This document shows, one piece after another, positions 1,524-57,748 of a stretch of DNA of 64,000 nt (its first letter is position 1; each line of letters begins with the position of its first letter). Both the position numbers and the translations under genes were made by a program. The DNA is from Haliotis rubra (taxonomy: Eukaryota). Under the pieces are notes generated by a model. It was not told the DNA's origin. It saw nothing but the letters and a program-made list of their open reading frames with translations, and searched no databases. The stretch is taken from contig NW_025764968.1 in assembly GCF_003918875.1 (NCBI RefSeq), forward strand, positions 62,001 to 126,000. The letters run 5' to 3'.

Positions 1524-2636
1524 TTAGGCAACAATAACTACAGTGTTGATGATGGCCGCTGATAGAAATACGACAAAGAGGATGTTATCCAACTTCTGAG
1601 CATCCAAGTTGTGGAGTCTGTCTTTCATCTTGGACACCTCTGTGGAGGTGTCCCCCTCTGTCTTGTCTGCCACAGATGAAGCTGTCTTGTGATCTCCCTG
1701 GAGTTGGTTGTTCCTGATCCTGAGGGTTGTTGTGACAGCCAGGAGTGCCAGGAAGCTTTGAAGCAGGATACAGATGAGATAGATCATGATCTTTGGAACT
1801 CTAGTGGATGTCCTTGGCATGATGTCATAGACAAAGTTGAGGAACACAGCATGCGACACAAAGATGGAAATCAGAAAGGATACTTTCTCTCCTGAATCAG
1901 CGGGAAGGATGAAGACAAAAGCATTCATGATGGAGGTCAAAGCCATTGGTACAATGATACTTAACACGTAGAATAGGCTTTGTCTCTCAAGTGTAAATGT
2001 CAATGATTGGAAAGTAATTCCAATAAATGATACATCTCCACTTGTCGTTTGTATTAATGTCCATTCAGACTCCTTCTTTATGTATGAGGTGTATTCGTAA
2101 CTGGATATAGGGTTGACATGCAAGTTGATATAGTCTCGATAGGTATGAAATATTAACTCACGTTTCTGTTCATCAAAAGGAAACTGAAAGGCATCAGTCA
2201 CACATATGGTCTTGAACATGTCAGATGTGTATGCCAAAACATGGCCATCATTATTTAGACTCATTGTGAAAGATCTGGATGAGAATAGAGACGCGTCACT
2301 CACAGCATTTAATAAATTAACTTGTGGTAGCCATACTTGATGAGGCTCAATGTCAATGCTACCATTATAAAGTGACTTGTTCCAGGACAGACTGGGATCA
2401 GTCCAGTTAACTGTAATGACTCCAGTGAATGTAAGAAGTTGTTCCACAGAATTGAGGTCCAATATAGCTCCAAGTACAAAGTAAATAGAAACATTTACTT
2501 TTGAATGTCCAGGAGGAAATGGTGGCTTCTTAGCTCTTGTGTAGTTGATGGAATTGTGTATTTGAGTCCATGTCTCCCTCAGCAGAAGGCATGTCACGAG
2601 ATATGTGAGAAATATCCAGGACAGATGGGAATACAT
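1524..2636 (-). CDS. Cys-loop ligand-gated ion channel subunit, copy 1 (370 aa, single coding exon; second Cys-loop cysteine mutated to Arg)
   Basis: True start is probably Met46 of the 415-aa ORF (MYSHLSWIF.., hydrophobic signal peptide), giving the same 1113 nt as copies 4 and 5. Motifs: WTDPSLSW, VWLP, CVTDAFQFPFDEQKR (Cys-loop, TGT->CGT), SEW, M1 with Pro, DSGEKVS M2, MPRTS, M3, LD..LF M4. Confidence 0.9.
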   Translation of the reverse strand: MYSHLSWIFLTYLVTCLLLRETWTQIHNSINYTRAKKPPFPPGHSKVNVSIYFVLGAILDLNSVEQLLTFTGVITVNWTDPSLSWNKSLYNGSIDIEPHQVWLPQVNLLNAVSDASLFSSRSFTMSLNNDGHVLAYTSDMFKTICVTDAFQFPFDEQKRELIFHTYRDYINLHVNPISSYEYTSYIKKESEWTLIQTTSGDVSFIGITFQSLTFTLERQSLFYVLSIIVPMALTSIMNAFVFILPADSGEKVSFLISIFVSHAVFLNFVYDIMPRTSTRVPKIMIYLICILLQSFLALLAVTTTLRIRNNQLQGDHKTASSVADKTEGDTSTEVSKMKDRLHNLDAQKLDNILFVVFLSAAIINTVVIVA

Positions 2637-10791: not shown

Positions 10792-11610
10792 TTAAAAATT
10801 GACATAAACAAAACATCTCCAGATATCCAAAATGTTTTCCCATGGCACAAACAAGTGCAAAACATACTTAAACAACTTTCCAACTGCAGTTATGCTGCAC
10901 ATAGATGTGAGTTTGGCAACAAAAACAACAGTGTTGATGATGGCGATGGATAGCAATACCACAAAAAGGATGTTATCCATCTTCTGAGCATCCAAGTTGT
11001 GGAGTCTACCTTTCATCTTGGACACCTCTGAGGCGTTATCCCCCTCTGTCTTGTCTGCCACAGTTGAAACTCTCTCGTGATCTCCCTGGAGTTGGTTGTT
11101 CCTGATCCTGAGGGTTGTTGTGACAGCCAGGAGCGCCAGGAAGCTTTGAAGGAGGATACAGATGAGATAGATCATGATCTTTGGAACTCTGGTGGATGTC
11201 CTTGGCATGATGTCGTAGACAAAGTTGAGGAACACAGCATGTGACACAAAGATGGAAACAAGAAAGGATACTTTCTCTCCGGAATCTGCAGGAAGGATGA
11301 AGACAAACGCATTCATGATGGAGGTCAAGGCCATTGGAATAATGATGCTTAACACATAGAAGTGACTCTGTCTCTTCAGGGTCAAGGTCACTGATTGGAA
11401 AGGATATCCCTTAAAGAATGCAACTCCACTTGTCATTTGTATCACTGTCCATTCAGAATCGTTCTTTACAAGTGACATGTATTCAAAACTTGGCAATGGG
11501 ATTTCATTCAATTTGATATAATTCCGATACGAATCAAAGACAAGTTGACATTTCTGTTCATCAAAAGGAAACTGAAAGGCATCAGTTACACATATGGTCT
11601 TGAACTTGCC
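10792..11610 (-). pseudogene. Cys-loop receptor copy 2: N-terminal half deleted, stop codon lost
   Basis: FKTICVTDAFQFPFDEQKC through M4 is present. At ~11610 the sequence joins directly to what is intronic sequence in copy 6 (~537 bp missing, including ATG and signal peptide). The ancestral TAA is AAA at 10912-10914, reading through to 10792. Confidence 0.85.
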
Positions 11611-15249: not shown

Positions 15250-15629
15250 GGTCATTCTGTCATCCTATCTCACCATCCCATAATCTTTCTACCATCCTAG
15301 CTCACCATCCCTTCATCATTCTGTCATCCTATCTCACCATTCCTTCATCATTCTGTCATCCTATCTCACCATCCCTTCATCATTCTGTCATCCTATCTCA
15401 CCATTCCATCATCATTCTGTCATCCTATCTCACCATCCCATCATCATTCTGTCATCCTAGCTCACCATCCTTCATCATTCTGTCATCCTATCTCACCATT
15501 CCTTCATCATTCTGTCATCCTATCTCACCATCCCTTCATCATTCTGTCATCCTATCTCACCATCCCCTCATCTTTCTACCATCCTAGCTCACCATTCCAT
15601 CATTCTAACATTCTATGTCAACATCCCAT
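15250..15629. repeat. CATC-rich satellite (continues at 20605-21100 after the Gypsy insertion)
   Basis: TCATCATTCTGTCATCCTATCTCACCATCC units. Confidence 0.9.
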
Positions 15630-18600: not shown

Positions 18601-20604
18601 GTGCTCCGAAGCGTCCCCAACGCATGATGTTACGACTTCAGAAGTACGATTTTGAGGTCATCTACAAGAGGGGATCTCAAATGTTCTTTGCTGACACTCT
18701 GAGTAGAGCATATCTTCCACATGTGAAACATACTGAGACTGATGACGGAGATGTGTTTGCTGTTGATGTTCGATGTCAGATAGCGCTTGACGTTGAATCC
18801 ATCAACATGGTTGAGTATGTGCCAATATCTGAGGAACGAATTGACCAGTTACAAAAAAGCAGCTGTGGAAGACAAATCAATGACGATACTGAAGGATCTG
18901 ATTCAGGACGGCTGGCCAACGTCGTCAGATGATGTGCCATGGTGTGCCAGGGTCTTTTTCCCCTTTTGCGATGAGCTCTCTGTTCAAAACAGCATAGTGT
19001 TCAAGGGTGAACGTGTTGTTGTGCCAGTCAGTATCCGCCCTGGCATCATGGAAAGAATTCACTACAGTCACTTGGGGATACAAGGTTGTATCAGAAGAGC
19101 CAGAGAGTCTGTGTATTGGCCCAATATGGCCGCTGACCTCGCAGATTTCATCAGCAAGTGTGATACTTGCAATACGCTGCAACAGGATCAAAGTCGAGAG
19201 CCATTGGTCAGTCATGAAATACCTAGTCGTCCATGGGAGAAACTAGGGTGTGTTCTTTTTTAGTTTGATCAAAAAGATGTTTTGATCACTGTTGACTACT
19301 ACTCGGACTATTTTGAGGTTGACAGACTGCATGATAAAAGGGCACCTGAAATCATTAAAAAGTTGAAATCCCATTTGGCGAGGCATGGACTTCCCAATCA
19401 GATTGTGTCAGACAATGGACCTCCCTTTCATTCTGAAGCTTTCCATACATTTGCAACAGAGTATGAGTTTGATCATATCACTTCATCACCCAGGTACCCA
19501 CAGTCGAATGGGAAAGTGGAGAGTGCTGTGAAGATCGTCAAGAGACTCATGAGTAAGTCTCAGCATGCACAGTCAGACCCCTTTCTGGCCCTATTGGACT
19601 TAAGAAATGTGCCGACTGGACGGTGTAGGCAGCTCGCCAGTTCAAAGGTTGTTTGGGGCAGAGCGAGAACGGCTACCAACGTCAAGTCGATTGCTGCAGC
19701 CAAAACTATTGAAAACGCCCCTGCCGCACTTTCCAGCAAGAGGTCCAAACAAGCTTACTACTACAATCGTGGTGCAGCTGAACTGTCAGAACTGAGAGAT
19801 GGAGATGTAGTTCGGGTGAAGCCATTCAGTCGTGACAAAAAGAAATGGAAGAAAGCTGTCAGAGAGAACAGCAAGTGGATGTAATGATCGTATGACATGC
19901 GTACAGAAGATGGAAGATCTCTTGAGGAGAAATAGACGCCATCTAAGAAAATCTCAAGAGGCTGCCCCTGAGACTAAAGATGTCGAACTGGATTTGGAAG
20001 AGCAGAGAATGGATGAAAGGTCAATGAAAGAGTTTCAGTCAACTGTGAACTCTCACGGTAACACTCCTGTGAAAACCCCTGTGAAAACTCCTGTGAAAAT
20101 TTTGAAAACTCCTGTAGACTTTGATGTGAACACTCCTGTGAACACTCCTAGGATCATGGACAGTTCTGTTCATGGCACAGCACCTGGTCATGAGATCAGA
20201 ACGAGGAGAGGCAGGGTGCTCAGACCACCACCCGGATACAGGGACTTTGTGCCTTAAAAAGAAAAAAAGGGAGGAAGATATGACGTGTGGTCCTGCTTAT
20301 CAGCAAAGACTTTTAATTTCTCAAGAAAGAGAGATAGACTTTAATTTGTTCATTTTAACTTGTTTAGCATTTGTTTAAATTGTTTGCTGGGATAGTGTGT
20401 TAATTGCTATCTTTACTTTTCTAAAGAAAGGGAGATGTTGCATAATGATTACTCCCTAATAGTCTGTACACAATGACTGGTCCATGGGCAACGTGCGTCT
20501 GTGTAGGCCAAAATTAACATGGAGTAAAGTGTTCGTCTCCCACCACAGTTTCATGTTATCTGAGTCTTCCTAGGACATCTCCAGACATGACATATAACTT
20601 AACA
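15630..20604 (+). mobile_element. Full-length Ty3/Gypsy LTR retrotransposon (Mag-like), inactivated
   Basis: 169-bp LTRs (15630-15798, 20436-20604), TG..CA, 5 mismatches. 5-bp TSD CCCAT. PBS TGGTGTCAGAAGTG (tRNA-Leu type). PPT AAAGAAAGGGAGA. Order gag-PR-RT-RH-INT. Confidence 0.97.
16045..20257 (+). pseudogene. Gypsy gag-pol polyprotein with premature stops and frameshifts
   Basis: ATG at 16045; in-frame TGA at 16165. Two Zn knuckles (CKFCGRSH..C, CNKCKRPNHFAYVC), protease LDCGS, RT RMPFGL..VHDD, RNase H CDAS/DHKPL, integrase H..H..CDTC, VDYYS, SDNGP, SNGKVE. Frameshifts at ~18300, 18500, 18860, 19615; TAG at 19261. Confidence 0.92.
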
Positions 20605-23224: not shown

Positions 23225-24213
23225 TTAGGCAACAAAAACAACAGTGTTGATGATGGCGACAGATAGAAATACCACAAAAAAGGATGTTATCCATCTTCTG
23301 AGCATCCAAGTTGTGGAGTCTGCCTTTCATCTTGGACACCTCTGAGGCGTTATCCCCCTCTGTCTTGTCTGCCACAGATGAAACTCACTTGTGATCTCCC
23401 TGGTGTTGGTTGTTCCTGATCCTGAGGAGTGTGACAGCCAGGAGTGCCAGGAAGCTTTGAAGGAGGATACAGATGAGATAGATCATGATCTTTGGAACTC
23501 TAGTGGATGTCCTTGGCATGATGTCGTAGACAAAGTTGAGGAACACAGCATGCGACACAAAGATGGAAACAAGAAAGGATACTTTCTCTCCGCGGAATCG
23601 GCAGGGAGGATGAATACAAAAGCATTCATGATGGAGGTCATTCAGATTCTTTCTTTATATATGACCCATATTCATAACTGGATATTGGGAGAACATGCAA
23701 GGTGATATAATTGCGATAAGTATTGAAGATCAACTCACATTTCTGTTCATCAAAAGGAAACTGAAAGGCATCAGTCACACATATGGTCTTGAACATGTCG
23801 CTTGTGTGTGCCAAAACATGGCCATCATGTTGTCGACTCATAATGAAAGATTTGGATGAGAATAGAGACACGTCACTCACAGAATTTAATAAGTTAATTT
23901 GTGGGAGCCATACTTGATGAGGCTGAATATCAATGCTACCATTATAAAGTGACTTGTTCCAGGACAGACTAGGATCAGTCCAGTTTACTGTAATCACTCC
24001 AGTGAATGTTAGAAGTTGTTCCACAGAATTGAGGTCCAATATAGCTCCAGGTGAAAACCTAATAGTAACGTTAACCGTTGAATGTCCAGGAGGAAATGGT
24101 GGATCTTTAGCTCTTGTGTAGTTGATGGAATTCCGTATTTCAGTCAATGTCTCTCCCATCTGTAGGCATGCCACGAGATTTGTGAGAAATATCCAGGACA
24201 GATAGAAATACAT
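23225..24213 (-). pseudogene. Cys-loop receptor copy 3: 124-bp deletion after KKESE plus indels in the TM region; open ECD-only ORF 23638-24213
   Basis: Signal peptide and extracellular domain are open to ..KKESE*. The junction GAGGTCA|TTCAGA at 23640 removes loop C and most of M1. Downstream lesions relative to copy 4: +2 (~23592), -3 (~23428), +1 A (~23280). Confidence 0.85.
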
Positions 24214-27671: not shown

Positions 27672-28860
27672 GTCATTCTGTCATCCTATCTCACCATCCC
27701 TTCATCATTCTGTCATCCTATCTCACCATCTCTTCATCATTCTGTTACCCTACCTCACCATTTCATCATCTTTCTGCAATTCCATTCTACCCTTCTGTCT
27801 CAATATCCAGTCATCACTCTATAATCCTATCTGAACATCCCATCATCTTTCTACTATCTTATTTGAACATCCCATCATCTTTCTACTATCCTATCTGAAC
27901 ATCCCATCATCTTTCTATTATCCTATCTGAACATCCCTTTATCTTTCTATAATCCTATCTGAACATCCCATCATCTTTGTACCATCCTATCTGAACATCC
28001 CATCATCTTTCTACTATCCTATAGTACAATGTGTGAAGCCCATTTCTGGTGTCCCCCACCGTGATGTTGCTGAAATATTGCTAAAAGCGGCGTAAAACTA
28101 AACTCAGTCAGTCAGTCAGTCTACTATCCTATCACACCATTCCATCACAATTCTAACATTGTATCTCCATTCTGCTATCCTTTCTCACCATCCCACCAAT
28201 GTACCATTCTATCCCAAAACCACACAATCAGTTCACCATCCCACATCATTCTACCATCCAATCACACTATCCCACATCATTCTACCATCCAATCACATCA
28301 TCCCACCATCATTCTACAATCCAATCACACCATCCAACATCATTCCACCATCCAATTACACCATCCCATCATCATTCTACAATCCAATCCCACCATCCAA
28401 CATCATTCTACCATCCAATCACATCATCCCACCATCATTCTTCAATCCAATCACACCACCCAACATCATTCTACAATCCAATCACACCATCCCACCACCA
28501 TCATTCTACAGTCCAATCACACCATCCCACCATCATTCTACCATCCAATTACACCATCCCATCATCATTCTACAATCCAATCACACCATCCCACATCATT
28601 CTACCATCCAATCTCATCATCCCACCATCATTCTACAATCCAATCACAACATCCAACATCATTCTACAATCCAATCACACCATCCCACATCATTCTACTG
28701 TCCTATCTCACCATCCCATCATCACTCTACCATCCAATCACATCATCCCACCATCATTCTACAATCCAATCACACCATCCAACATCATTCTACCATCCAA
28801 TCTCACCATCCCTTCATTATTTTACATTCTTATTCCCACCATCCTACCATTATTCTAACA
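27672..28860. repeat. CATC-rich satellite
   Basis: Same unit family as 4128-7797; its first ~580 bp are nearly identical to 4128-4710. Confidence 0.92.
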
Positions 28861-29429
28861 TGTCCATTGACAGCTTTGCTGGTGTTACCATCGATAGAAT
28901 GGATTATGTGGTCAGGCTTTGTGACCAGGTTGATAGTGAGTAATTATACCTCACAGTATCCATCACTGGATTGTCTTGTCCTGACTGACTCAATTAGCGA
29001 TCACCAGCTTATGGTCTGAATATTGCTTAGTGCTGCATCAAACAGCAAGACTCATCAACAGCTCTTACCTCTGTTGACATGTCCAGGTATTCACCAAACC
29101 AGCAGTGATTTGACTGTTTTATGTGTAAGGAGCTTTTACTGGGCACTGGATGTCATCACAGTTTGTTGACAGGAGGTGGAAATGAAACCACTTGGCTCTG
29201 TAATTTACCTGAAGTTTGTTATTTACCTCGTAATGGATCAATGTGATACTAATGGCGAAACTATACACATCAAGATTGTCATGTAATGATTTCCACAAAT
29301 CTATGTGTGCAGAACTCTATTGTGAAATGAGCACAAGACCGGACTTGATCTATGAACAATCAATAAATTTAATTTAAACACAAGTTTAGATGTACAGTGA
29401 CAACAGAAAATGCATTGTGTGAAATAAGT

Positions 29430-31990: not shown

Positions 31991-33103
31991 TTAGGCAACA
32001 AAAACAATAGTGTTGATGATGGCCACCGATAGAAATACCACAAAGAGGATGTTATCCAACTTCTGAGCATCCAAGTTTTGAAGTCTGCCTTTCATCTTGG
32101 ACACCTCTGAGGCGTTATCCCCCTCTGTCTTGTCTGCCACAGTTGAAACTCTCTTGTGATCTCCCTGGAGTTGGTTGTTCCTGATCCTGAGGGTTGTTGT
32201 GACAGCCAGGAGTGCCAGGAAGCTTTGAAGGAGGATACAGATGAGATAGATCATGATCTTTGGAACTCTAGTGGATGTCCTTGGCATGATGTCGTAGACA
32301 AAGTTGAGGAACACAGCATGTGACACATAGATGGAAACCAGAAAGGATACTTTCTCTCCGGAATCGGCAGGAAGGATGAAGACAAAAGTATTCATGATGG
32401 AGGTCAAGGCCATTGGAATAATGATGCTTAACACATAGAAGAGACTTTGTCTTTTCAGGGTCAAGGTCACTGATTGGAGAGCAATTTCACTTAAGCTTGC
32501 ATCTCCACTTGTCATTTGTATTAATGTCCATTCAGACTCCTTCTTTATATATGAGCTGTATTCATTACGGGGTATAGGGTTGACATGCAAGTTGATATAG
32601 TCTCGATAGGTATGAAATGTTATTTCACATTTCTGTTCATCAAAAGGAAACTGAAAGGCATCAGTCACACATATGGTCTTGAACATGTCGGATGTGAATG
32701 CGAAAACACTGCCATCATGATTTAGACTCATAATGAGAGATCTGAATGAGAATAGAGAGGTGTCACTCACAGCATTTAATATATTAACTTGTGGTAGCCA
32801 TACTTGATGAGGCTCAATGTCAATGCTACCATTATAAAGTGACTTGTTCCAGGACAGACTGGGATCTTTCCAGTTAACTGTAATAACTCCAGTGAATGTT
32901 AGAAGTTGTTCCACAGAATTGAGGTCCAATATAGCTCCAAGTACAAAGTAAATAGAAACATTTACTTTCGAATGTCCAGGAGGAAATGGTGGCTTGTTAG
33001 CTCTTGTGTAGTTCATGGAATCCAGTATTTCAGTCCATGTCTCCCTTAACTGCTGGCAAGCCACGAGATTTGTGAGAAATATCCAGGACAAATGGAAATA
33101 CAT
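31991..33103 (-). CDS. Cys-loop ligand-gated ion channel subunit, copy 4 (intact, 370 aa)
   Basis: Complete ORF: signal peptide, C-x13-C (CVTDAFQFPFDEQKC), GEK, four TM segments, TAA. Confidence 0.93.
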   Translation of the reverse strand: MYFHLSWIFLTNLVACQQLRETWTEILDSMNYTRANKPPFPPGHSKVNVSIYFVLGAILDLNSVEQLLTFTGVITVNWKDPSLSWNKSLYNGSIDIEPHQVWLPQVNILNAVSDTSLFSFRSLIMSLNHDGSVFAFTSDMFKTICVTDAFQFPFDEQKCEITFHTYRDYINLHVNPIPRNEYSSYIKKESEWTLIQMTSGDASLSEIALQSVTLTLKRQSLFYVLSIIIPMALTSIMNTFVFILPADSGEKVSFLVSIYVSHAVFLNFVYDIMPRTSTRVPKIMIYLICILLQSFLALLAVTTTLRIRNNQLQGDHKRVSTVADKTEGDNASEVSKMKGRLQNLDAQKLDNILFVVFLSVAIINTIVFVA

Positions 33104-33384
33104 TGTTACGGTCAGTCCTCACTTAACCATGAGATTGTGTTTGTGATTGCAGTATATGATGGATTTCCTTGATATAGAGAATGGTTTAGAATGTTTGTAC
33201 AGCCATAATGTGGAAGAATTGTCAAGACACTTCTTAGCTCACCTGTTGCTCTGACGTGAATGCTTCAGATAAATGACAAGAAGACAGTCTATAGGTACAC
33301 ACATAGGTGCTCAGGAACCTGGAATGTGACCAAAATGGCTTTAAAGAGAACATTGTTAAACCAAAGAATGGTATCTCCACACAA

Positions 33385-33895
33385 AGTACGGTTTCATAGG
33401 TTACTTCTCAGGAACATTGTTGATCAAAGAAAGGTTTCATAGGCTTCTTCACGGGAACATTGTTGATCAAAGAAAGGTTTCATAAGTTACTTCACAGGAA
33501 CATTGTGGAACAAAGAAAGGTTTCATAGGTTACTTCACAGGAACATTGTGGAACAAAGAAAGGTTTCATAGGTTACTTCACAGGAACATTATGGAGCAAA
33601 GAAAGGTTTCATAGGTTACTTCACAGGAACATTGTGGAACAAAGAAAGGATTCATAGGTTACTTCACAGGAACATTATGGAGCAAAGAAAGGTTTCATAA
33701 GTTACTTTACAGGAACATTGTGGAACAAAGAAAGGTTTCATAGGTTACTTTACAGGAACATTGTTGAACAAAGAAAGGTTTCATAGGTTACTTCACAGGA
33801 ACATTGTTGATCAAAGAAAGGTTTCATAGGTTACTTTACAGGAACATTGTGGAACAAAGAAAGGTTTCATAGGTTACTTCACAGGAACATTGAAC
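33385..33895. repeat. 43-bp minisatellite (AAGAAAGGTTTCATAGGTTACTTCACAGGAACATTGTGGAACA), ~12 copies
   Basis: Period 43 measured directly (33541 to 33584). Confidence 0.95.
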
Positions 33896-38109: not shown

Positions 38110-39965
38110 ATCATATATTCATATTGATGAGGAGTTTTTATCCTATACTAAAGATTTCATAGTAAATCATGATGTGCAAGAATCTGTCTGTGAAATCTGT
38201 GATGATGATGGCATAAATAACATTGTGAAAGGGGACATAAGTATTGAAGAGGTGGATTTTGCTCTTGGTAATTTACGGCCTAATAAAAGTCCTGGTCCAG
38301 ATGGCATTCCACCTGAGATGTTTAAGGGTAATAAAATTGTTTTGCAGTCATATTTATGTACTTTGTTTAATGGCGATTTTATGTCAGCTATATTTCCAGA
38401 TCAGTGGTCACTTAGTATTATATTTCCATTGCATAAAAGAGGGAGGATTCACCAAGTAAATAATTATCGTGGTATCTCTGTTATGGATATTTGTGGCAAA
38501 GTTTTTACTATCATTTTGAACAGGGGCTTAAAAGAAGGTTGTTGAGGTGTTAGATCTGTACCCTGAGTGTCAAGATGGATTCCGTAAAGCCTATTCTACA
38601 GTCAATAACATTTTTACACTCCAAAGAGCTATACAGAAATATTTGTCAAAAACAGGAGGTAGATTTTATTGTTTATTTGTTGATTTCCGTAAGGCGTTCG
38701 ATTCAGTTAATAGAGATCTTCTTTGGTTTGTTCTGTTATCTAATAGTGTCCATGGTTCTATGTTCAATATCATTAGAGATATGTATTCAAAGACTAGTGT
38801 TAAGTTAAATAAATTAAACGATTTGGAATATTTTGATTTTTTTGAGTGGGGTTCGACAAGGCTGCATTTTAAGTCCTCTTTTATTTGCGTCTTTTGTTAA
38901 TCAGTTGTATATGGAAATGATTATTGCGGTGACATAATTACTTATGTTTGTTTGCAGATTCTGCCATTAGTCTTCAGGTATTTAGTCTTTAGAAATGGTG
39001 GTAAATTAAGGCAGTATGAATCATGGCATTTGGGTGATCTTTAGTTAAACGTTTCTACATATTTTAACTATTTGGGTTTACTGTTTTCAAATAGACTTTC
39101 ATGGTCTAATGGGTGGTGGGGTAGCCTAGTGGTTAAAGCATTTGCTTATCGTCACACTGAAGACCCGGGCTCGTATTCTCCACATGGGTACTATGTGTGA
39201 AGCCTATTTCTGGTGTCCCCCGCCATGATATTGCAGGAATATTGCTAACAGCAATGTAAAACTGAACTCACTCATGGTCTAAATCGGTTCAAAATTTAGA
39301 AAATAAAGCGAATAGCGCCTTATCCTCAGTGAAGGTTTTTGGTAGGAGACTTACAAACTATTCTGTTCAAAATGTTTGACGTTCAGATAAAGCTGATAAT
39401 TTTGTATGCTTCGGAAATATGGGGTTTTCAGAAATGGCATGTTATTGAACAGTTTCATATTAGGGTTTGTAAGTATGTTGACTTTTCCACATGCCCAAGG
39501 ATAGAAATCCAAACCGGTGCTATATTATGTTGCACAATTTAGACAAAGCTGGTAGGAAACCATGGGTATATTTTGGCTGAAATACTTTGTTCAATTATGG
39601 GGGTTTTTTTGTGTGGGAAGCTCAAGGAACTGGCAACGAGGAACAGTTTTTGAAAGATTTTCATGTCAGTGATTGTCAAAAGCAGCTCATTTTTTCAGAA
39701 ATGCACAAATGTTCATCTCTTGATGTTTATTCCAGTAACAAAAATGTATTTTGCATTGAAACATATTTAACATGATTGAAATCTAAAGATGCGAGGCGTA
39801 GAATAACAATGTTACGAATTTGTGCACTTCCAATATATAAAATACAGGTAGATTTGATGGAGTTTTGAGGCACCAAAGAGTTTGTAATATTTGTAATGAT
39901 AATTTTGTAGAAAATGAATTTCATTTCCTATTTGAATGTAAAATTTATCATGATTTGTGCTGCAA
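38110..39965 (+). mobile_element. Second degenerate LINE ORF2 fragment
   Basis: KSPGPDG, NYRGIS, QDGFRK, VDFRKAFD, GVRQG, LYASEIWG, terminal C..C..ENEFHFLFEC. Confidence 0.8.
39110..39271 (+). mobile_element. tRNA-derived SINE inserted in the LINE
   Basis: A-box TAGCCTAGTGG, degenerate B-box, (ACTC) tail, 11-bp TSD TCATGGTCTAA. Confidence 0.8.
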
Positions 39966-41172: not shown

Positions 41173-41221
41173 GTTGTGAAATGAGTAAAAGACCAGGCAA
41201 GATTAGTGAACAATCAATAAA

Positions 41222-42262
41222 TTCCGCCATCATTTTGCCATCCTATCTCGCATTCCGCCATCATTTTACCATACTATCTCAAATTCTGCCATCATTTTAC
41301 CATCCTTTCTCACATCCCACCATCATTTTGCCATCCTATCTCACATTCTGCCATCATTTTACCATCCTATCGCACATTCTGCCATCATTTTGCCATCCTT
41401 TCTCACAACAACCATCATTTTACCATCCTATCTCACATTCCGCCATCATTTTGCCATCTTATCTCACATTCCGCCATCATTTTACCATCCTATCTCACAT
41501 TCTGCCATCATTTTACCATCCTTTCTCACATCCCACCATCATTTTGCCATCCTATCTCACATCACACCATCATTTTACCAGCCTATCTCACATTCTGCCA
41601 TCATTTTACCATCCTATCTCACATCCCACCATCATTTTACCATCCTATCTCATCATTTTATTCTGCCATCATTTTACCTCACTCTCTCATTTTACATCAC
41701 ATTCACCATCATTTTACCACCCTATCTCACATTCCGCCATCATTTTACCATCCTATCTCACATTCCGCCATCATTTTGCCATCCTATCTCACATCCCACC
41801 ATCATTTTGCCATCCTATCTCACATCCCACCATCATTTTACCATCCTATCTCACCATCCCACCATCATTTTACCATCCTATCTCACATTCAGCCATCATT
41901 TTGCCATCCTATCTCACATTCCGCCATCATTTTGCCATCCTATCTCACATTCTGTCATCATTTTACCATCCTATCTCACATCCCATCATTATTTTACCAT
42001 CCTATCTCACATCCCATCATTATTCTACCATCCTACCTCACATCCCATCATTATTTTACCATCCAATCTCACTTCCCACCATCATTTTACCATCCTATCT
42101 CACATTCTGCCATCATTTTACCATCCTATATTACATCCCACCATCATTTTGCCATCCTATCTCATGTCTCACAATCCTTTTATCTCACATCCCACCCTCA
42201 TTCTAGCATCCTATCTCACCATCCAATCATTATTCTACCATCGTATCTCACATTCCACATCA
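41222..42262. repeat. CATC-rich satellite (resumes at 43097-43300)
   Basis: CCATCATTTTACCATCCTATCTCACATTC units. Confidence 0.92.
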
Positions 42263-43096
42263 TTATCCACCGCCTCGCGTTTAGTACGAAGCGGGGGATA
42301 TAGTATTAGGCTCCGTCTGTCCGTACGTCCATCCGTACGTACGAATTGGAATATCTTAAGGTCTGTTTACTAGATTATTTTCATATTAGGTCCCTAGGTT
42401 CATCACAGATCAGAAAGGTCCCAGTCAGGTTTGGTGACCTTGACCTTCATTTCAAGGTCACAAAGGGACTTTAATGTTTTAGTCTTGTCAGCGAGATACC
42501 TCAAGAACCATTCCCTGGATTTTCTTCATATTTGACGCCAAGCTTCAACCAGGGAAGGCGCAGAGCCCAGTTAATTTTGGTGACCTTCACTTACTTGTAA
42601 AGGTCACAGCGACACTTTCAAGATTTCAGTATGTTAACCTGCATGTTACGATGGTCAGCGAGATATCTCAAGAACCATTCACTGAACTTTCTTCATATTT
42701 GACACCATGCTTCATCTAGGGAAAGTGCAAGGTCCAGTCGATTTTGGTGACCTTCACTTAATTTTCAAGGTCACAAAGACAATTTGAAGATTTCAGCATG
42801 TTAACCTGAATTCACTGGATTTTCTTCATAGACTTTCAAGACTTCCCTTCAATGTTTTGCAATAAGCAATTTCTTTAGTACCACTTTTGCATATTTCATT
42901 CACTATGACATGTCAAGGTCAAATTCTGTCTAGAAAATATTTGTGTGTTTGAACAACTAAAGAGCAAGATATCAAGAGAGGTTGACTGGTCATGTTTTTG
43001 TTGACTTTTAACTTTAAATTAAACTTTCATTACTTTTTAAGTTTGATTTGGTAATTTGTGGTTGGGGATTATGTCACCTTAGTGACAATGCTTGTT
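42263..43096 (+). mobile_element. Helentron-associated (HINE) element inserted in the satellite
   Basis: 5' inverted segment plus (GTCC)-type microsatellite; internal ~166-bp repeats with TGACCTT..AAGGTCA palindromes; 3' hairpin TGTCAC..GTGACA and CTTGTT. Confidence 0.7.
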
Positions 43097-46866: not shown

Positions 46867-47979
46867 TTAGGCAACAAAAACAACAGTGTTGATGATGGCG
46901 ATGGATAGAAATACCACAAAGAGGATGTTGTCCATCTTCTGAGCATCCAAGTTTTGAAGTCTGCCTTTCATCTTGGACACCTCTGTAGAGTTATCCCCCT
47001 CTGTCTTGTCTGCCACAGTTGAAACTCTCTTGTGATCTCCCTGGAGTTGGTTGTTCCTGATCCTGAGGGTTGTTGTGACAGCCAGGAGTGCCAGGAAGCT
47101 TTGAAGGAGGATACAGATGAGATAGATCATGATCTTTGGAACTCTAGTGGATGTCCTTGGCATGATGTCATAGACAAAGTTGAGGAATACAGCATGTGAC
47201 ACAAAGATGGAAATCAGAAAGGATACTTTCTCTCCGGAATCGGCAGGAAAGATGAAGACAAAAGCATTCATTATGGAGGTCAAGGCCATTGGAATAATGA
47301 TGCTTAACACATAGAAGAGACTTTGTCTCTCAAGGGTTAAGATCACTGATTGGAGAGCAATTTCACTGAAGTTTGCTTCTCCACTTGTCATTTGTATTAA
47401 TGTCCATTCAGACTCCTTCTTTATATATGAGGTGTATTCATTACGGGGTATAGCGTTAACATGCAAGTTGATATAGTCTCGATAGGTATGAAATGTTATT
47501 TCACATTTCTGTTCATCAAAAGGAAACTGAAAGGCATCAGTCACACATATGGTCTTGAACATGTCGGATGTGAATGCGAAAACAATGCCATCATGTTGTA
47601 GACTCATTATGAAAGATCTGGATGAGAGCAGAGACGCGTCACTCACAGCATTTAATAAATTAACTTGCGGTAGCCATACTTGATGAGGCTCAATGTCAAT
47701 GCTACCATTATAAAGTGCCTTGTTCCAGGACAGACTGGGATCAGTCCAGTTAACTGTAATGACTCCAGTGAATGTTAGAAGCTGTTCCACAGAATTGAGG
47801 TCCAATATAGCTCCAAGTATAAAGTAAATAGAAACATTTACTTTCGAATGTCCATGAGGAAATGGTGGCTTCCTGGCTCTTGTGTAGTTGATGGAATCCA
47901 GGATTTCAGTCCATGTCTCTCTCAGCTGTTGGCATGCCACGAGATTTGTGAGAGATATCCAGAAGAGATGGAAAAACAT
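46867..47979 (-). CDS. Cys-loop ligand-gated ion channel subunit, copy 5 (intact, 370 aa)
   Basis: Start at Met21 of the 390-aa ORF (MFFHLFWIS..); all motifs intact; 1113 nt. Confidence 0.92.
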   Translation of the reverse strand: MFFHLFWISLTNLVACQQLRETWTEILDSINYTRARKPPFPHGHSKVNVSIYFILGAILDLNSVEQLLTFTGVITVNWTDPSLSWNKALYNGSIDIEPHQVWLPQVNLLNAVSDASLLSSRSFIMSLQHDGIVFAFTSDMFKTICVTDAFQFPFDEQKCEITFHTYRDYINLHVNAIPRNEYTSYIKKESEWTLIQMTSGEANFSEIALQSVILTLERQSLFYVLSIIIPMALTSIMNAFVFIFPADSGEKVSFLISIFVSHAVFLNFVYDIMPRTSTRVPKIMIYLICILLQSFLALLAVTTTLRIRNNQLQGDHKRVSTVADKTEGDNSTEVSKMKGRLQNLDAQKMDNILFVVFLSIAIINTVVFVA

Positions 47980-48349: not shown

Positions 48350-48693
48350 AGTTACGTTACAGGAACATTGTGGAACAAAGAAGGATTTCATAGGTTACTT
48401 CACAGGAACATTGTGTTACAAAGAAAGGTTTCATAGGTTACTTCACAGGAACATTGTGTTACAAAGAAAGGTTTCATAGGTTACTTCACAGGTGCATTGT
48501 GGAACAAAAGAAGATTTCACAGATGTTTTCACAGGAACATTGTGGAACAAAGAAAGATTTCATAGGTTACTTCACAGGAACATTGTTGATCAAAGAAAGG
48601 TTTCATAGGTTACTTCACATGAACATTGTGGAACAAAGAAAGATTTCACAGGTTACTTCACAGGAACATTGTGGAACAAAGAAAGATTTCATA
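48350..48693. repeat. 43-bp minisatellite, ~8 copies
   Basis: Same unit as 33385-33895. Confidence 0.92.
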
Positions 48694-50093
48694 GTCTGGC
48701 CAGACTTTATGATTACATTGATAACGTGTCATGAAATTCCATTTCCTTATTCCTGCAGTATCCATCACTGGATTGTCTGGTCCTGACTTACTTAAGGGTA
48801 GTCCATATATGGCTGTAATACTGCTTATTGCAGCATCAAACAAGACTCCAGCTAAGACTGGTCAACAGCTCACTGTGCGTTGACATGCCCAGGTCATCAC
48901 CAAACCAACAGCGATTTGTTTTATGTGTAAGGAGCTTTTAGTGGGCACTGGATGTCATCACAGTTTATTGACAGCATGTGGAATCGAAGCCATATAGCTC
49001 TATTACTGATGTTGTTTACCACATAATGGATCAGGATGTGATTTCACTATTTACATCGCTGGTGAAAAAAATGGCTGGTGCAGGTTATCTTTACTCACAG
49101 TTGCACAAGGTGCAGAGAACAAAAAGTCCTCCAACATCTTAAAGCTGTCATGTGTTTTAATTGAGAAGTGAGCGAATGGAAGTCATACGTTTCACTCCAC
49201 ATGACTTGTTACAAGGAGAAACATTTGTGTACTCATAAATCTGTTACGTAGCAGTGATCATATTTGAGATTTGTAAATAAAGGTAATGCAAACTTGAAAC
49301 ACAATCATTCATCATTTATCATTATGGGATCAGGTTCTGTTGAATGTATCTGAGTACTTGTTATGAAAAGTGCTAAACAAGTATTTATGTTACTCTTTAG
49401 AACCAGTGACATTATTTTTTGCTGCAACCAAATCTGTAAGTCAGGTACTGAATAAAAACGATTTTGCACCCCTGACTGGATCAATGTCATACTGATGGAG
49501 AACTTGAACACATCAAGAGTGTTACTTAGTGAATCCCAAAATCTATGTGTGCAGAACTCTGTTGTGAAATGAGTAATAGACCAGACAGGATCAATCAATA
49601 ATCAATACATTTAATTTACACACACACACATTTACGTTTACAGTGACAACAGAAACTACATTGGGTAAACTGACATCAGCAATAAGTAACAGGCACTGTG
49701 ATTTATCTAAGTGCACTCACGACTGTCCAGAATGTTGTCACTGCCAAATGTCTTGTAACAGGCATCTGTCTATTCTTGTCTCCAGTTAAGTGTAGTTACA
49801 ACAAGTATATTCACAACATCTACTGCCGCACAACAATCCCCTTGTTCATGAAAAGAAAGTTTTTAACACAAGGGAAAACACCTATGAGCGTTAAAGTTTC
49901 AGAAAAAACCAGGTAAGCTTACATTTGGCCTTGCTTGGCTCTGGCATCAAAATCAAAACACTTACAGCTCTCTAACTGTCAAATTATCAAAGAAGTTTGT
50001 AATGTCAGGAAAAGATGTCTTTCATATCCAATGATAGTTAATTTGCTAAAATGTGGTATGCAGTTTTCCTGCCAATAGTTGCAAACAGATCTA

Positions 50094-51207: not shown

Positions 51208-52315
51208 TTAGGCAACAAAAACAACAGTGTTGATGATGGCCACCAATAGAAATACCACAAAGAGGATGTTACTCATCTTCTGAGCATCCAAGTTGTGGAG
51301 TCTACCTTTCATCTTGGACACCTCTGAAGAGTTATCCCCCCCTGTCTTGTCTGCCACAGTTGAAACTCTCTTGTGATCTCCCTGCAGTTGGTTGTTCCTG
51401 AGGGGTTGTTGTGACAGCCAGGAGTGCCAGGAAGCTTTGAAGGAGGATACAGATGAGATAGATCATGATCTTTGGAACTCTGGTGGATGTCCTTGGCATG
51501 ATGTCGTAGACAAAGTTGAGGAACACAGCATGTGACACAAAGATGGAAACCAGAAAGGATACTTTCTCTCCGGAATCTGCAGGAAGGATGAATACAAAAG
51601 CATTCATGATGGAGGTCAAGGCCATTGGAATAATGATGCTTAACACATAGAAGAGACTTTGTCTCTCAAGGGTAAAGGTCACTGATTGTAAAGAAATTCC
51701 CTTAAAGAATGCAACTCCACTTGTCATTTGTATCACTGTCCATTCAGAATCGTTTTTTAGAAATGGCATGTATTCAAAACTTGGCAATGGGATATCATTC
51801 AATTTGATATAATTCCGATACGAATCAAAGACAAGTTGACATTTCTGTTTATCAAAAGGAAACTGAAAGGCATCAGTCACACATATGGTCTTGAACTTGC
51901 CATAGATCTCAGCGAGGAGAGTACCATCATGCTTTAAATTCATTATCAATGGTCTAGTTGTAAGAAGAAGTGCTTCACTTTCAGCATTTATAAGATTAAT
52001 TTGTGGGAGCCATACTTGATGAGGCTGAATATCAATGCTACCATTATAAAGTGACTTGTTCCAAGACAGACTAGGATCAGTCCAATTCACTTTAATCAAT
52101 GCAGTGAATGTTAGAAGCTGTTCCACAGAATCAAGGTCCAATATAGCTCCAGGTGAAAAGTTAATAGTAACGTTAATCTTTGAATGTCCAGAGGGAAATG
52201 GCGGATCTTTAGCTCTTGTGTAGTTGATGGAATTCCGTATTTCAGTCCATGTCTCTCTCATCTGTAGGCATGCCACGATATTTGTGAGAAATATCCAGGA
52301 CAGATGGAAATACAT
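51208..52315 (-). pseudogene. Cys-loop receptor copy 6 (divergent B-type ECD), net -5 frameshift just after M3, loses M4
   Basis: ORF open from MYFHLSW to LAVTTT. CCTGATCCTGAGGG reads CCTGAGGGG at ~51397-51405. M4 and the ancestral TAA (51208-51210) survive in another frame. Could partly be an assembly indel. Confidence 0.8.
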
Positions 52316-56637: not shown

Positions 56638-57748
56638 TTAGGCAACAAAAACAACAGTGTTGATGATGGCCACCAATAGAAATACCACAAAGAGGATGTT
56701 ACTCATCTTCTGAGCATCCAAGTTGTGGAGTCTCTCTCATCTTGGACACGTCTAAAGCGTTATCCCCCTCTGTCTTGTCTGCCACAGATGAAGCTCTCTT
56801 GTGATCTCCCTGGAGTTGGTTGTTCCTGATCCTGAGGGTTGTTGTGACAGCCAGGAGTGCCAGGAAGCTTTGAAGCAGGATACAGATGAGATAGATCATG
56901 ATCTTTGGAACTCTGGTGGATGTCCTTGGCATGATGTCATAGACAAAGTTGAGGAACACAGCATGTGACACAAAGATGGAAATCAGAAAGGATACTTTCT
57001 CTCCTGAATCGGCAGGAAGGATGAAGACAAACGCATTCATGATGGAGGTCAAGGCCATTGGAATAATGATGCTTAACACATAGAAAAGACTTTGTCTCTC
57101 AAGGGTCAAGATCACTGATTGGAGAGCAATTCCACTAAATGATGCAACTCCACTTGTCATTTGTATTAATGTCCATTCAGACTCCTTCTTTATATATGAG
57201 CTGTATTCATTATCGCGTATGGGGTTAACATGCAGGTTGATATAGTCTCGATAGGTATGAAAGATTAACTCACATTTCTGTTCATCGAAAGGAAACAGAA
57301 AGGCATCAGTCACACATATGGTCTTGAACATGTCGTTTGTTTGTGCGAAAATAGTGCCATTATGATTTAGACTCGTAATGAAGGATCTAGATGAGAATAG
57401 AGACGTGTCACTCACAGCGTTGAATAAATTAACTTGCGGTAGCCATACTTGATTAGGCTCAATGTCAATGTTACCATTGTAAAGTGACTTGTTCCAGGAC
57501 AGACTAGGATCAGTCCAGAAAATGCTAATGTATGCAGTAAATGTTAGAAGTTGTTCCACATAATCAAGGTCCAATACAGCCCCAAGTACAAAGTAAGTAG
57601 AAACATTTACTTTCGAATGTCCAGGAGGAAATGGTGCCTTCTTGGCCCTTGTGTAATTAATGGAATCCAGGATTTCTGTCAACGTCTCCCTTAGCTGTTG
57701 GCAAGCCACGAGATTTGTGAGAAATATCCAATACAGGCGAAAAGACAT
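56638..57748 (-). pseudogene. Cys-loop receptor copy 7, -2 frameshift in the M3-M4 loop, loses M4
   Basis: ORF open from MSFRLYWIF to VSKM. 2-nt loss at ~56733. M4 and TAA (56638-56640) persist out of frame; length 1111 vs 1113. Confidence 0.8.

What the first reader, a model, noticed from the sequence alone, without database searches (positions are those of the whole stretch)
32440..33000. Hypervariable ligand-pocket loops on an almost invariant pore module
Seen: from FYVLSII to RNNQLQGDH the copies differ at only ~5 conservative positions, while pocket positions differ radically. The loop E residue (alpha7 L119 equivalent) is Y/H/F/F/E/Q in copies 1,3,4,5,6,7. Loop D is GVITVN/ALIKVN/AYISIF. 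Loop F is ISSYEY/IPRNEY/LPSFEY/IRDNEY. The loop C tip is DVSFIGIT/VAFFKGYP/DASLSEIA/EANFSEIA/VAFFKGIS/VASFSGIA. Structural motifs (WTDPSLSW, VWLPQ, Cys-loop) stay almost fixed. Inference: diversifying selection on ligand specificity with a shared pore that would permit combinatorial heteropentamers.
Basis: partly seen in the sequence, partly recalled or inferred. Interest (0 to 1): 0.75.

Follow-up and report, generated by a model that had tools for sequence, protein, structure and literature searches.

The report
Abalone orphan nicotinic-like channels: shared pore, divergent pocket
A tandem array of intron-free nicotinic-receptor-like channel genes in blacklip abalone keeps its pore half almost identical, mainly because the copies overwrite each other there by gene conversion, while the ligand-pocket loops evolve about three times faster, with only moderate evidence of positive selection.

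Summary
Only c1, c4 and c5 have intact reading frames. c1 has lost the second Cys-loop cysteine. c2, c3, c6 and c7 are truncated or frameshifted.

- **The invariant pore is largely gene conversion.** Synonymous divergence (dS) in TM1-3 is 0.04-0.29. In the extracellular domain it is 0.1-0.6 within the window and 1.3-2.7 against three further copies (two H. rubra, one H. asinina).
- **The block is sharp.** High identity starts at nt ~625 and stops at the stop codon.
- **The two halves have different histories.** Their trees conflict, frameshifted copies are homogenised too, and one exchange (c6-c7) runs into non-coding flank.
- **Purifying selection also acts** on TM1-3 (dN/dS about 0.05-0.15).
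- **Pocket loops evolve faster.** Their omega is 0.74-1.0 against 0.29-0.40 elsewhere in the extracellular domain, but never above 1.
- **Site models give nominal support** for 1-7% of sites at omega 4-12, nearly all in loops D, E, F and C. With only the four intact window-clade genes the test is not significant.

Heteropentamer assembly is untested. The scan has already described similar arrays elsewhere in this genome. Such arrays, and pocket diversification in cephalopod chemotactile receptors, are published. Pore-limited concerted evolution looks new for this superfamily.

The parts
1527..2636 (-). Copy c1: intact 370-codon ORF, but the second Cys-loop cysteine is Arg (TGT to CGT). Its TM1-3 carries about 10 private changes, so it has escaped recent homogenisation.
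10915..11604 (-). Copy c2: pseudogene holding only codons 141-370. 5'-UTR-like sequence is joined directly upstream, which indicates an internal deletion.
23274..24213 (-). Copy c3: pseudogene with a 124-nt deletion (codons 192-233), a 2-nt insertion, an in-frame stop and a truncated 3' end. Mosaic: c6-like 5' of nt ~319, divergent from c6 after it.
31994..33103 (-). Copy c4: intact gene and the finding's locus. Signal peptide 33038-33103, extracellular domain 32471-33037, TM1-3 block 32150-32470, short intracellular loop plus TM4 31994-32149.
32873..32893 (-). Loop D (beta2) of c4. Codons 73 and 75 (alpha7 W55 and Q57 equivalents) are candidate positively selected sites.
32690..32737 (-). Loop E of c4. 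Codons 136 (alpha7 L119 equivalent) and 138 are candidate positively selected sites.
32471..32578 (-). Loop F (32531-32578) and a short loop C (32471-32512) of c4. Loop C has no vicinal Cys and no Tyr188/Tyr195 equivalents. Candidate sites are 178, 183 and 203.
32000..32479 (-). Homogenised pore block (c4 nt ~625-1104). It is 87-100% identical in nucleotides to paralogues and to H. asinina copies whose extracellular domain and 3' UTR cannot be aligned.
46870..47979 (-). Copy c5: intact gene and the closest relative of c4 (extracellular-domain dS 0.105).
51211..52315 (-). Copy c6: 5-nt deletion after TM3 causes a frameshift. Its extracellular domain is the most divergent in the window. Its 3' half and 3' flank are nearly identical to c7.
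56641..57748 (-). Copy c7: 2-nt deletion before TM4 causes a frameshift. It shares a recent exchange tract with c6 from nt ~626 through at least 690 nt of 3' flank.

Best explanation
The window is part of a tandem birth-and-death array of single-exon, nicotinic-receptor-like pentameric channel genes in Haliotis rubra. At least 8 copies lie on contig QXJH01001068.1, 2 more on another contig, and relatives occur in H. asinina.

The proteins have the full Cys-loop-receptor fold and a cation-type pore (GEK at -2' to 0', Asp at 20'). They lack nearly all acetylcholine-binding aromatic residues and the loop C cysteine pair, so they are orphan receptors with an unknown ligand.

The two halves of the gene evolve in different ways:
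- **Pore half.** Pre-M1 to the stop codon, and most strongly TM1-3, is under strong purifying selection. Because it therefore stays similar between copies, it is repeatedly overwritten among paralogues by non-allelic homologous recombination (gene conversion or unequal crossing-over). This erases synonymous differences as well and also drags broken copies along.
- **Extracellular half.** This half has diverged past the point where conversion between distant copies can act, so it keeps its own history. Its pocket loops evolve at close to the neutral rate. A few complementary-face and loop C positions probably change under positive selection.

What is shown: family membership, gene integrity, the dS contrast, tree conflict, mosaic breakpoints and faster loop evolution.

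What is inferred: the feedback between selection and conversion, positive selection at named sites, and any ligand or sensory role.
For: **Family and fold**
- Pfam PF02931 and PF02932 both score above threshold.
- The best solved relative is human alpha7, E about 1e-31.
- The AF2 model has pLDDT 90.2, and the top Foldseek hits are alpha7 and muscle nAChR.

**Species**
- H. rubra.

**Synonymous divergence**
- Within the window, extracellular-domain dS is 0.10-0.58 and TM1-3 dS is 0.05-0.25. For c4-c6 the values are 0.459 against 0.065, Fisher P = 8e-6.
- Against Hr8, Hr9 and Ha1, extracellular-domain dS is 1.3-2.7 and TM1-3 dS is 0.04-0.29, with dN 0.004-0.04.
- By segment, nucleotide divergence is 0.16-0.22 in the flanks, 0.17-0.25 in the extracellular domain and 0.023 in TM2-3.

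**Block boundaries**
- High identity to distant copies begins at nt ~625 and ends at the stop codon.

**Conflicting histories**
- Quartet site counts favour (Hr9,Ha1) by 72:9:8 in the extracellular domain, but (Hr8,Hr9) by 8:1:2 in the 3' half.
- AU tests reject each half's tree on the other half's data, p = 1e-4 and 0.044.

**Breakpoints**
- Maximum chi-square puts the c6-c7 breakpoint at nt 626. Divergence is 23.4% before it and 3.7% after it, including non-coding flank. For c3-c6 the breakpoint is at nt 319. Both have P < 0.001.

**Broken copies**
- c3, c6 and c7 have TM1-3 dS of only 0.065-0.079 to c4.

**Loop evolution**
- Omega is 0.74-1.0 in the loops against 0.29-0.40 outside them, P from 1e-7 to 2e-13.
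- M2a against M1a gives P = 0.025, 4e-5, 2.7e-4, 7e-4 (segment-specific trees) and 0.026 (intact genes only). Candidate sites are 73, 75, 77, 132, 136, 138, 178, 183 and 203.
- On beta2 (73, 75, 77) and beta6 (132, 136, 138) the candidates are spaced by even intervals, so they sit on one face of the strand.
Against: **Positive selection**
- It is not robust. The four intact window-clade genes give M2a against M1a P = 0.145 and loop omega = 1.00.
- The identity of the candidate sites shifts between data sets.
- Recombination and multi-nucleotide codon changes inflate such tests.
- The likelihood code is my own and gives NEB (naive empirical Bayes) rather than BEB (Bayes empirical Bayes) posteriors.

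**Gene conversion alone**
- It does not explain why TM1-3 differs between H. asinina and H. rubra by only 3 synonymous and 3 non-synonymous fixed changes, when the Hr9-Ha1 extracellular domain has dS 0.325 and their flanks are 70-80% identical.
- Either those two copies are old paralogues or synonymous sites in the block are constrained.

**Composition**
- GC3 is 0.55-0.60 in the 3' half against 0.31-0.38 in the extracellular domain. This fits biased conversion, but there is no control gene. c1's private changes show no strong-to-weak bias.

**Gene integrity and expression**
- The frameshifts in c6 and c7 were not checked against reads.
- No run on record as RNA covers c4's extracellular domain.
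Confidence: 0.7

Rival explanations
1. Selection only. The pore half is invariant simply because every residue is under strong purifying selection, the extracellular domain is free to vary, and no gene conversion is involved.
For: TM1-3 dN/dS is 0.03-0.15. The block ends exactly at the stop codon, which is a functional boundary. In c1 against c4 and c5, TM dS (0.167-0.187) matches extracellular-domain dS (0.143-0.157).
Against: - Purifying selection on the protein cannot lower dS 10- to 30-fold.
- Frameshifted copies are homogenised too.
- The tree of the 3' half conflicts with the extracellular-domain tree.
- The c6-c7 tract continues about 700 nt into non-coding flank at 2-6% divergence, where other pairs show about 20%.
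Confidence: 0.05
2. Conversion plus relaxation only. The contrast is produced by homogenisation of the 3' half. The loop variability is neutral drift in surface loops of orphan or dying genes, with no adaptive diversification of ligand specificity.
For: - Loop omega is 0.74-1.0 and never significantly above 1.
- Four of the seven window copies are broken.
- M2a is not significant with the four intact window-clade genes.
- Extracellular-domain dS equals flank divergence.
- Gene-conversion mosaics that mimic selection have been noted elsewhere in this genome (unverified note).
Against: - M2a against M1a is nominally significant in five of six data sets, including with segment-specific trees and with seven intact genes.
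- Candidate sites fall almost only in the loops defined beforehand, with even-interval spacing on beta2 and beta6 at the alpha7 W55, Q57 and L119 equivalents.
- The non-loop extracellular domain of c7 still shows omega 0.17-0.22, so c7 was selected for most of its history.
Confidence: 0.25
3. Nucleotide-level constraint. The TM1-3 coding block carries a second function in the DNA or RNA, such as a structure, a regulatory target or a recombination handle, which holds synonymous sites constant across the genus in addition to any conversion.
For: - Between-species TM1-3 dS is 0.07-0.15 (only 3 fixed synonymous differences), against 0.325 in the extracellular domain and 0.24 in the intracellular loop plus TM4 of the nearest cross-species pair. 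Non-coding flanks are 70-80% identical.
- Contigs of putative RNA runs from four differently labelled organisms match only 32029-32543, with about 4-5% difference in TM1-3. All but one of the differences from the family consensus are synonymous.
- GC3 is elevated in the block.
Against: - c1's TM1-3 has accumulated synonymous changes at the extracellular-domain rate while staying under protein-level constraint, with 7 private synonymous and 3 private non-synonymous changes.
- The neutral divergence between the two species is not known here, and Hr9 and Ha1 may be old paralogues.
- No overlapping ORF of 100 aa or more covers the block.
Confidence: 0.3

Closest known systems
Cephalopod chemotactile receptors (CRs; van Giesen 2020, Allard 2023, Kang 2023, as summarised in PMC11526382 and bioRxiv 10.1101/2025.10.28.685082)
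   Same: - Both are nAChR-derived, intron-free, tandemly expanded pentameric cation channels that have lost the acetylcholine site.
- Both keep a conserved channel architecture while pocket residues vary.
- In octopus CRT1, Y39, W122 and L191 are reported under positive selection. Here the candidates lie in beta1, loops D, E and F, and loop C.
   Different: - This family is from a gastropod, not a cephalopod.
- By sequence it is closer to human alpha7 (E 1e-31) than to squid CRB1 (E 8.5e-24), so membership of the CR clade is not shown.
- No ligand, tissue or heteromer data exist for it.
- Pore-restricted gene conversion was not mentioned in the cephalopod receptor texts I could read.
[quoted passage not shown]
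   Same: The genes are single-exon (retrogene-like), lie in tandem arrays of up to 12, show high sequence diversity and include many low-expression or degenerate copies. Clades with substituted ligand-binding residues and a 'CR-like' clade that includes gastropods have been reported.
   Different: Neither paper's text matched Haliotis in my searches, and neither analyses dS by domain. Among other tandem models in the protein library, units typically show 48-66% identity in the extracellular domain against 52-85% in the TM region. Only P0009 (41% against 89-90%) resembles the extreme decoupling seen here.
Domain-restricted gene conversion in tandem receptor paralogues: mammalian TLR1/TLR6 (PMC2077338); clustered protocadherins (PMC1852091) and plant NLR clusters (PMC3113787), from search listings and own knowledge, not read
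   Same: In TLR1/TLR6 the signalling and membrane half is kept alike between paralogues by repeated conversion, with paralogues more alike than orthologues there, while the ligand-recognition half diverges. Protocadherin and NLR clusters show the same general mode (own knowledge).
   Different: The protein superfamily is different. Here a multi-copy array is involved, conversion reaches pseudogenes, and the tract is bounded by the extracellular/TM junction and the stop codon.

Membership tests
Pentameric ligand-gated ion channel (Cys-loop receptor) superfamily | Neur_chan_LBD and Neur_chan_memb domains above Pfam gathering scores | tested here: met
   PF02931 scores 86-96 bits (cut-off 26) and PF02932 scores 49-56 bits (cut-off 28.1) for c1, c4 and c5.
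Pentameric ligand-gated ion channel (Cys-loop receptor) superfamily | Beta-sandwich extracellular domain followed by four TM helices | tested here: met
   The AF2 model has pLDDT 90.2 and pTM 0.81, with helices at 221-242, 250-272, 282-322 and 334-369. Foldseek top hits are alpha7 and muscle nAChR at E about 1e-26.
Pentameric ligand-gated ion channel (Cys-loop receptor) superfamily | Cys-x13-Cys signature loop | tested here: met
   Present in c2-c7, Hr8, Hr9, Hr10 and Ha1. c1 has Arg at the second Cys.
Acetylcholine-gated nicotinic receptor (functional nAChR subunit) | Aromatic box residues (alpha7 W55, Y93, W149, Y188, Y195) | tested here: not met
   From the HMMER alignment to alpha7 and the copy alignments: W55 becomes V, L, Y or A. 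Y93 becomes L, I or F. W149 becomes Y. Loop C is several residues shorter and has no Y188 or Y195 equivalent.
Acetylcholine-gated nicotinic receptor (functional nAChR subunit) | Vicinal Cys pair in loop C (alpha-type subunit) | tested here: not met
   There is no cysteine in loop C of any copy.
Acetylcholine-gated nicotinic receptor (functional nAChR subunit) | Cation-selective M2 signature (Glu at -1', no Pro insertion at -2') | tested here: met
   SGEK precedes M2 and aligns to alpha7 SGEK. Asp sits at 20'. The pore is unusual in having Val at 9' and His at 11' (alignment).
Cephalopod chemotactile receptor (CR) family | Intron-free genes in tandem arrays with a degenerate acetylcholine site | tested here: met
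   Single 370-codon ORFs, with at least 8 copies on one contig. The acetylcholine-site residues are lost.
Cephalopod chemotactile receptor (CR) family | Phylogenetic placement inside the CR or CR-like clade | tested here: inconclusive
   Only a similarity ranking was possible: alpha7 at 1e-31 and beta subunits at about 1e-30, ahead of 5-HT3A at about 1e-26 and squid CRB1 (8eiz) at 8.5e-24. No tree with named CR sequences could be built with these tools.
Cephalopod chemotactile receptor (CR) family | Pocket residues under diversifying selection | tested here: inconclusive
   M2a against M1a gives P from 4e-5 to 0.026 in five data sets and 0.145 in one. Loop omega is at most 1.
Cephalopod chemotactile receptor (CR) family | Expression in sensory epithelium and gating by poorly soluble environmental molecules | not testable with these tools
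   Only short contigs from runs guessed to be RNA were found, and they cover the pore block alone.
Concerted evolution by interlocus gene conversion | Within the tract, paralogues of one species are more alike than orthologues, and the tract's tree conflicts with that of the rest of the gene | tested here: met
   Quartet counts are 72:9:8 for (Hr9,Ha1) in the extracellular domain and 8:1:2 for (Hr8,Hr9) in the 3' half. AU tests give p = 1e-4 and 0.044.
Concerted evolution by interlocus gene conversion | Synonymous and non-coding differences are erased within tracts | tested here: met
   TM1-3 dS is 0.04-0.29 against 1.3-2.7 in the extracellular domain. The c6-c7 tract includes 3' flank at 2-6% divergence against about 20% in other pairs.

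The most novel reading that the evidence does not exclude
The pore block is a genus-wide constant cassette, held nearly fixed even at synonymous sites. It serves as the homology handle through which new extracellular domains are shuffled and kept compatible with a common channel. On this reading, abalone have built a combinatorial, chemoreceptor-like repertoire of orphan nicotinic-type channels, in parallel with octopus chemotactile receptors, with positive selection on complementary-face pocket residues.
Probability: 0.15. Interest if true: 0.75.

Novelty: new variant of a known kind. Interest (0 to 1): 0.45.

Why it matters
If the reading holds, it shows that a 'conserved pore, variable pocket' picture in expanded receptor arrays can come largely from gene conversion rather than selection. 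Scans for diversifying selection in such arrays therefore have to partition by recombination first.

It also supplies a defined set of un-annotated abalone orphan channels for functional tests. NCBI models contain only the 174-residue pore half. The intact genes are c4, c5, Hr8, Hr9, Hr10 and Ha1, and a short list of candidate tuning residues is available (73, 75, 136, 138, 178, 183, 203). These genes could be candidate chemosensory receptors in a commercially important gastropod.

Tried and rejected
**Widening the family**
- The word-index protein search found one full-length relative (H. asinina, 62%) and otherwise only TM-only 174-aa models from H. rubra.
- The exhaustive representative search gave nothing above 38% identity apart from one TM fragment.

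**Setting a neutral baseline between H. rubra and H. asinina**
- No single-copy orthologous sequence lies in the fetched loci. L001 against the window or L002 aligns only at the receptor units, their 70-80% identical flanks and some repeat-like stretches.
- The ORFs beside Hr10 look transposon-like.
- Three genome papers give no figure for this species pair.
- It therefore stays undecided whether TM1-3 synonymous sites are constrained between species.

**GC-biased conversion**
- GC3 is higher in the 3' half, but c1's private changes show no strong-to-weak excess. I treat this as suggestive only.

**Expression**
- No holder run is on record as RNA. The laid contigs cover only the pore block.

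**Dual coding**
- No overlapping ORF of 100 aa or more covers the block.

**Prior art**
- A literature search for gene conversion in Cys-loop receptor arrays found none.
- Kang 2023 (PMC10262778) is not held.

**Pentamer mapping**
- It was not possible, because only a monomer model without coordinates is returned.
Full report
**What is there**

The window has no N. It carries seven minus-strand copies of one single-exon gene:

| Copy | Coordinates | State |
|---|---|---|
| c1 | 1527-2636 | intact ORF; second Cys-loop cysteine is Arg |
| c2 | 10915-11604 | lacks codons 1-140 |
| c3 | 23274-24213 | 124-nt deletion, 2-nt insertion, in-frame stop, 3' truncation |
| c4 | 31994-33103 | intact |
| c5 | 46870-47979 | intact |
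| c6 | 51211-52315 | 5-nt deletion after TM3 |
| c7 | 56641-57748 | 2-nt deletion before TM4 |

The finding's coordinates (32440-33000) are codons 35-221 of c4, its extracellular domain (ECD).

The intact products (370 aa) match Pfam Neur_chan_LBD and Neur_chan_memb above threshold. Their best solved relative is human alpha7 nAChR, E about 1e-31. Squid chemotactile receptor CRB1 scores 8.5e-24. An AlphaFold2 model of c4 (pLDDT 90.2, pTM 0.81) has the beta-sandwich plus four-helix fold. Its best Foldseek matches are alpha7 and muscle nAChR chains.

The genome is Haliotis rubra, contig QXJH01001068.1. NCBI annotates only 174-residue pore-half models there, named 'CHRNA7-FAM7A fusion protein-like'.

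**Observation check**

The HMMER alignment to alpha7 confirms that the Y/H/F/F/E/Q position is the L119 equivalent. From FYVLSII to RNNQLQGDH, the copies other than the degenerate c3 differ at five conservative positions.

The frameshifts were not checked against reads.

**The receptor**

By alignment to alpha7:
- W55 becomes V, L, Y or A.
- Y93 becomes L, I or F.
- W149 becomes Y.
- Loop C is short, with no cysteine pair and no Y188 or Y195 equivalent.

These are therefore not acetylcholine-site subunits. The pore keeps the cationic SGEK motif and Asp at 20', but has Val at 9' and His at 11'.

**Pore half: selection plus gene conversion**

Nei-Gojobori estimates within the window:

| Region | dS | dN/dS |
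|---|---|---|
| ECD | 0.10-0.58 | 0.3-0.7 |
| TM1-3 | 0.05-0.25 | 0.03-0.2 for most pairs (up to 0.4) |

For c4-c6, dS is 0.459 in the ECD against 0.065 in TM1-3 (P = 8e-6). Nucleotide divergence by segment is 0.16-0.22 in both flanks, 0.17-0.25 in the ECD and 0.023 in TM2-3. The ECD is therefore at the neutral level and the pore half is depressed.

I fetched further copies:
- Hr10 lies on the same contig (L003, intact).
- Hr8 and Hr9 lie on another H. rubra contig (L002, intact).
- Ha1 (intact) and the partial Ha0 come from H. asinina (L001). There the gene sits antisense inside an LRRK2-like gene model.

Against Hr8, Hr9 and Ha1, ECD dS is saturated at 1.3-2.7. TM1-3 dS is only 0.04-0.29 and dN is 0.004-0.04. 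Identity to these copies is about 40% (unalignable) before nt ~625, 87-100% from nt 625 to 1104, and about 40% again immediately after the stop codon.

Three tests show that the two halves have different histories:
- Quartet site counts favour (Hr9,Ha1) by 72:9:8 in the ECD, but (Hr8,Hr9) by 8:1:2 in the 3' half.
- AU tests reject each half's tree on the other half's data, p = 1e-4 and 0.044.
- Maximum chi-square places a c6-c7 breakpoint at nt 626. Divergence is 23.4% before it and 3.7% after it, running about 700 nt into non-coding flank. A c3-c6 breakpoint lies at nt 319. Both have P < 0.001.

The broken copies c3, c6 and c7 have TM1-3 dS of only 0.065-0.079 to c4. These results cannot come from protein-level selection alone. 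They are the signature of non-allelic recombination.

c1 is the exception. Its TM1-3 has about 10 private changes, and its dS to c4 and c5 equals the ECD value. This is what a copy that has left the exchanging pool should look like.

My inferred model is a feedback. Strong purifying selection keeps the pore half similar enough to recombine, and recombination then erases even silent differences. The ECD and the 3' UTR have diverged too far for exchange between distant copies.

**Open point**

H. asinina and H. rubra copies differ in TM1-3 by only three synonymous and three non-synonymous fixed changes. The nearest cross-species pair, Hr9-Ha1, has these values:

| Region | Hr9-Ha1 |
|---|---|
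| ECD dS | 0.325 |
| Intracellular loop plus TM4 dS | 0.24 |
| TM1-3 dS | 0.084 |
| Non-coding flanks | 70-80% identical |

Unbiased conversion does not slow between-species divergence. So either these copies are old paralogues and the true species divergence is small, or synonymous sites in the block are constrained. c1's neutral-looking behaviour favours the first option.

Contigs of runs guessed to be RNA, from four differently labelled organisms, match only 32029-32543. They differ by about 4-5% in TM1-3, and all but one of the differences from the family consensus are synonymous. That leaves the second option open.

GC3 is 0.55-0.60 in the 3' half against 0.31-0.38 in the ECD, with equal GC12. 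This is suggestive of biased conversion but has no control. I could not obtain a neutral baseline.

**Pocket loops**

I defined loops A-F in advance from the alpha7 alignment (68 codons).

Pairwise estimates:
- Among the younger copies, loop dN/dS is 1.0-1.6 against 0.17-0.37 outside the loops.
- Among the intact genes, loop dN/dS is 0.8-1.4 against 0.3-0.4.
- Deep pairs show no excess.

My own GY94/F3x4 likelihood code gave the following:

| Data set | Loop omega | Non-loop omega | P (loops differ) |
|---|---|---|---|
| 5 taxa | 0.74 | 0.29 | 1e-7 |
| 6 taxa | 0.89 | 0.30 | 3e-12 |
| 4 intact window-clade genes | 1.00 | 0.40 | 9e-6 |
| 7 intact genes incl. Hr8, Hr9, Ha1 | 0.77 | 0.33 | 2e-13 |

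Loop omega is never significantly above 1.

M2a against M1a gave:

| Data set | P |
|---|---|
| 5 taxa | 0.025 |
| 6 taxa | 4e-5 |
| 7 taxa | 2.7e-4 |
| Three segments, each with its own tree | 7e-4 |
| 7 intact genes | 0.026 |
| 4 intact window-clade genes | 0.145 |

The models put 1-7% of ECD sites at omega about 4-12. Candidate sites are:
- 73, 75, 77 in loop D, the alpha7 W55, Q57 and S59 equivalents.
- 132, 136, 138 in loop E, where 136 is the L119 equivalent.
- 178, 183 in loop F.
- 203 in loop C.
- 168 in loop B, in one data set only.
- 52 and 54 on beta1, in one data set only.

Candidates on beta2 and beta6 are spaced by even intervals and so lie on one face of the strand. Almost all are on the complementary face.

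Caveats: the sample is small, broken copies are included, recombination remains within segments, some codons differ at several nucleotides (136, 203), and the posteriors are NEB (naive empirical Bayes). I rate real positive selection at about even odds.

**Comparison with what is known**

- Tandem arrays of intron-free nAChR genes are a published feature of molluscs (PMC6896357).
- Clades with substituted binding residues, and a 'CR-like' clade reaching gastropods, are reported in a 2026 preprint (PMC13174522).
- Cephalopod chemotactile receptors are nAChR-derived homo- or heteropentamers whose pocket residues are under diversifying selection (PMC11526382; bioRxiv 10.1101/2025.10.28.685082).
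- Conversion limited to the signalling half of tandem receptor paralogues is known for TLR1/TLR6 (PMC2077338).
- I found no report of it for Cys-loop receptors.
- In fused tandem models from the protein library, units usually show 48-66% identity in the ECD against 52-85% in the TM region. Only P0009 (41% against 89-90%) approaches this family.
- The scan has already described similar orphan arrays elsewhere in this genome, and several gene-conversion mosaics (unverified notes).

**Verdict**

This is a further, partly decayed array of a known kind of mollusc orphan channel. Its distinctive point is a sharply bounded, concertedly evolving pore block. That block accounts for most of the 'invariant module' impression. 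Faster evolution of the pocket loops is real, but adaptive diversification is only moderately supported. Heteropentamer formation and any sensory role are untested.

Noticed in passing
33381-33892, 48351-48694, 58127-58603: A 43-bp minisatellite (8-12 copies, 87-92% matches) lies about 280-790 bp upstream of the start codons of c4, c5 and c7, so it is part of the duplicated unit's promoter-side flank.
   Followed up: no
4710-7623, 15252-15603, 28234-28861, 41221-42264, 54357-54825: C/A-rich minisatellites with periods of 31-32, 44 and 63 bp and strong negative GC skew recur between the receptor copies. The same repeat family fills several kb of L003 at 76-78% identity. They are possible substrates for unequal crossing-over.
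   Followed up: partly
16168-20257 (+): A degenerate LTR-type retrotransposon lies between c2 and c3, with reverse transcriptase, integrase zinc-binding and integrase core domains in separate broken frames. A second reverse-transcriptase fragment is at 38547-38900.
   Followed up: partly
L001:1-21008 (H. asinina CM074534.1): The H. asinina family members Ha0 and Ha1 lie antisense inside an LRRK2-like gene model of 2587 aa that spans the whole locus. The array therefore appears nested in or beside that gene in both species.
   Followed up: partly
window copies and L002, L003: The public H. rubra annotation models only the last 174 residues (from Met197 in c4 numbering), under the name 'CHRNA7-FAM7A fusion protein-like'. 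The extracellular domains of this family are therefore un-annotated.
   Followed up: partly
32288-32356 (c4 M2): The pore-lining helix has Val at 9', His at 11' and Asn at 16', where related mollusc sequences have Leu at 9' in the 81-sequence alignment consensus.
   Followed up: no
11787-12157: A 184-bp unit repeated twice at 99% identity lies just upstream of the truncated copy c2.
   Followed up: no
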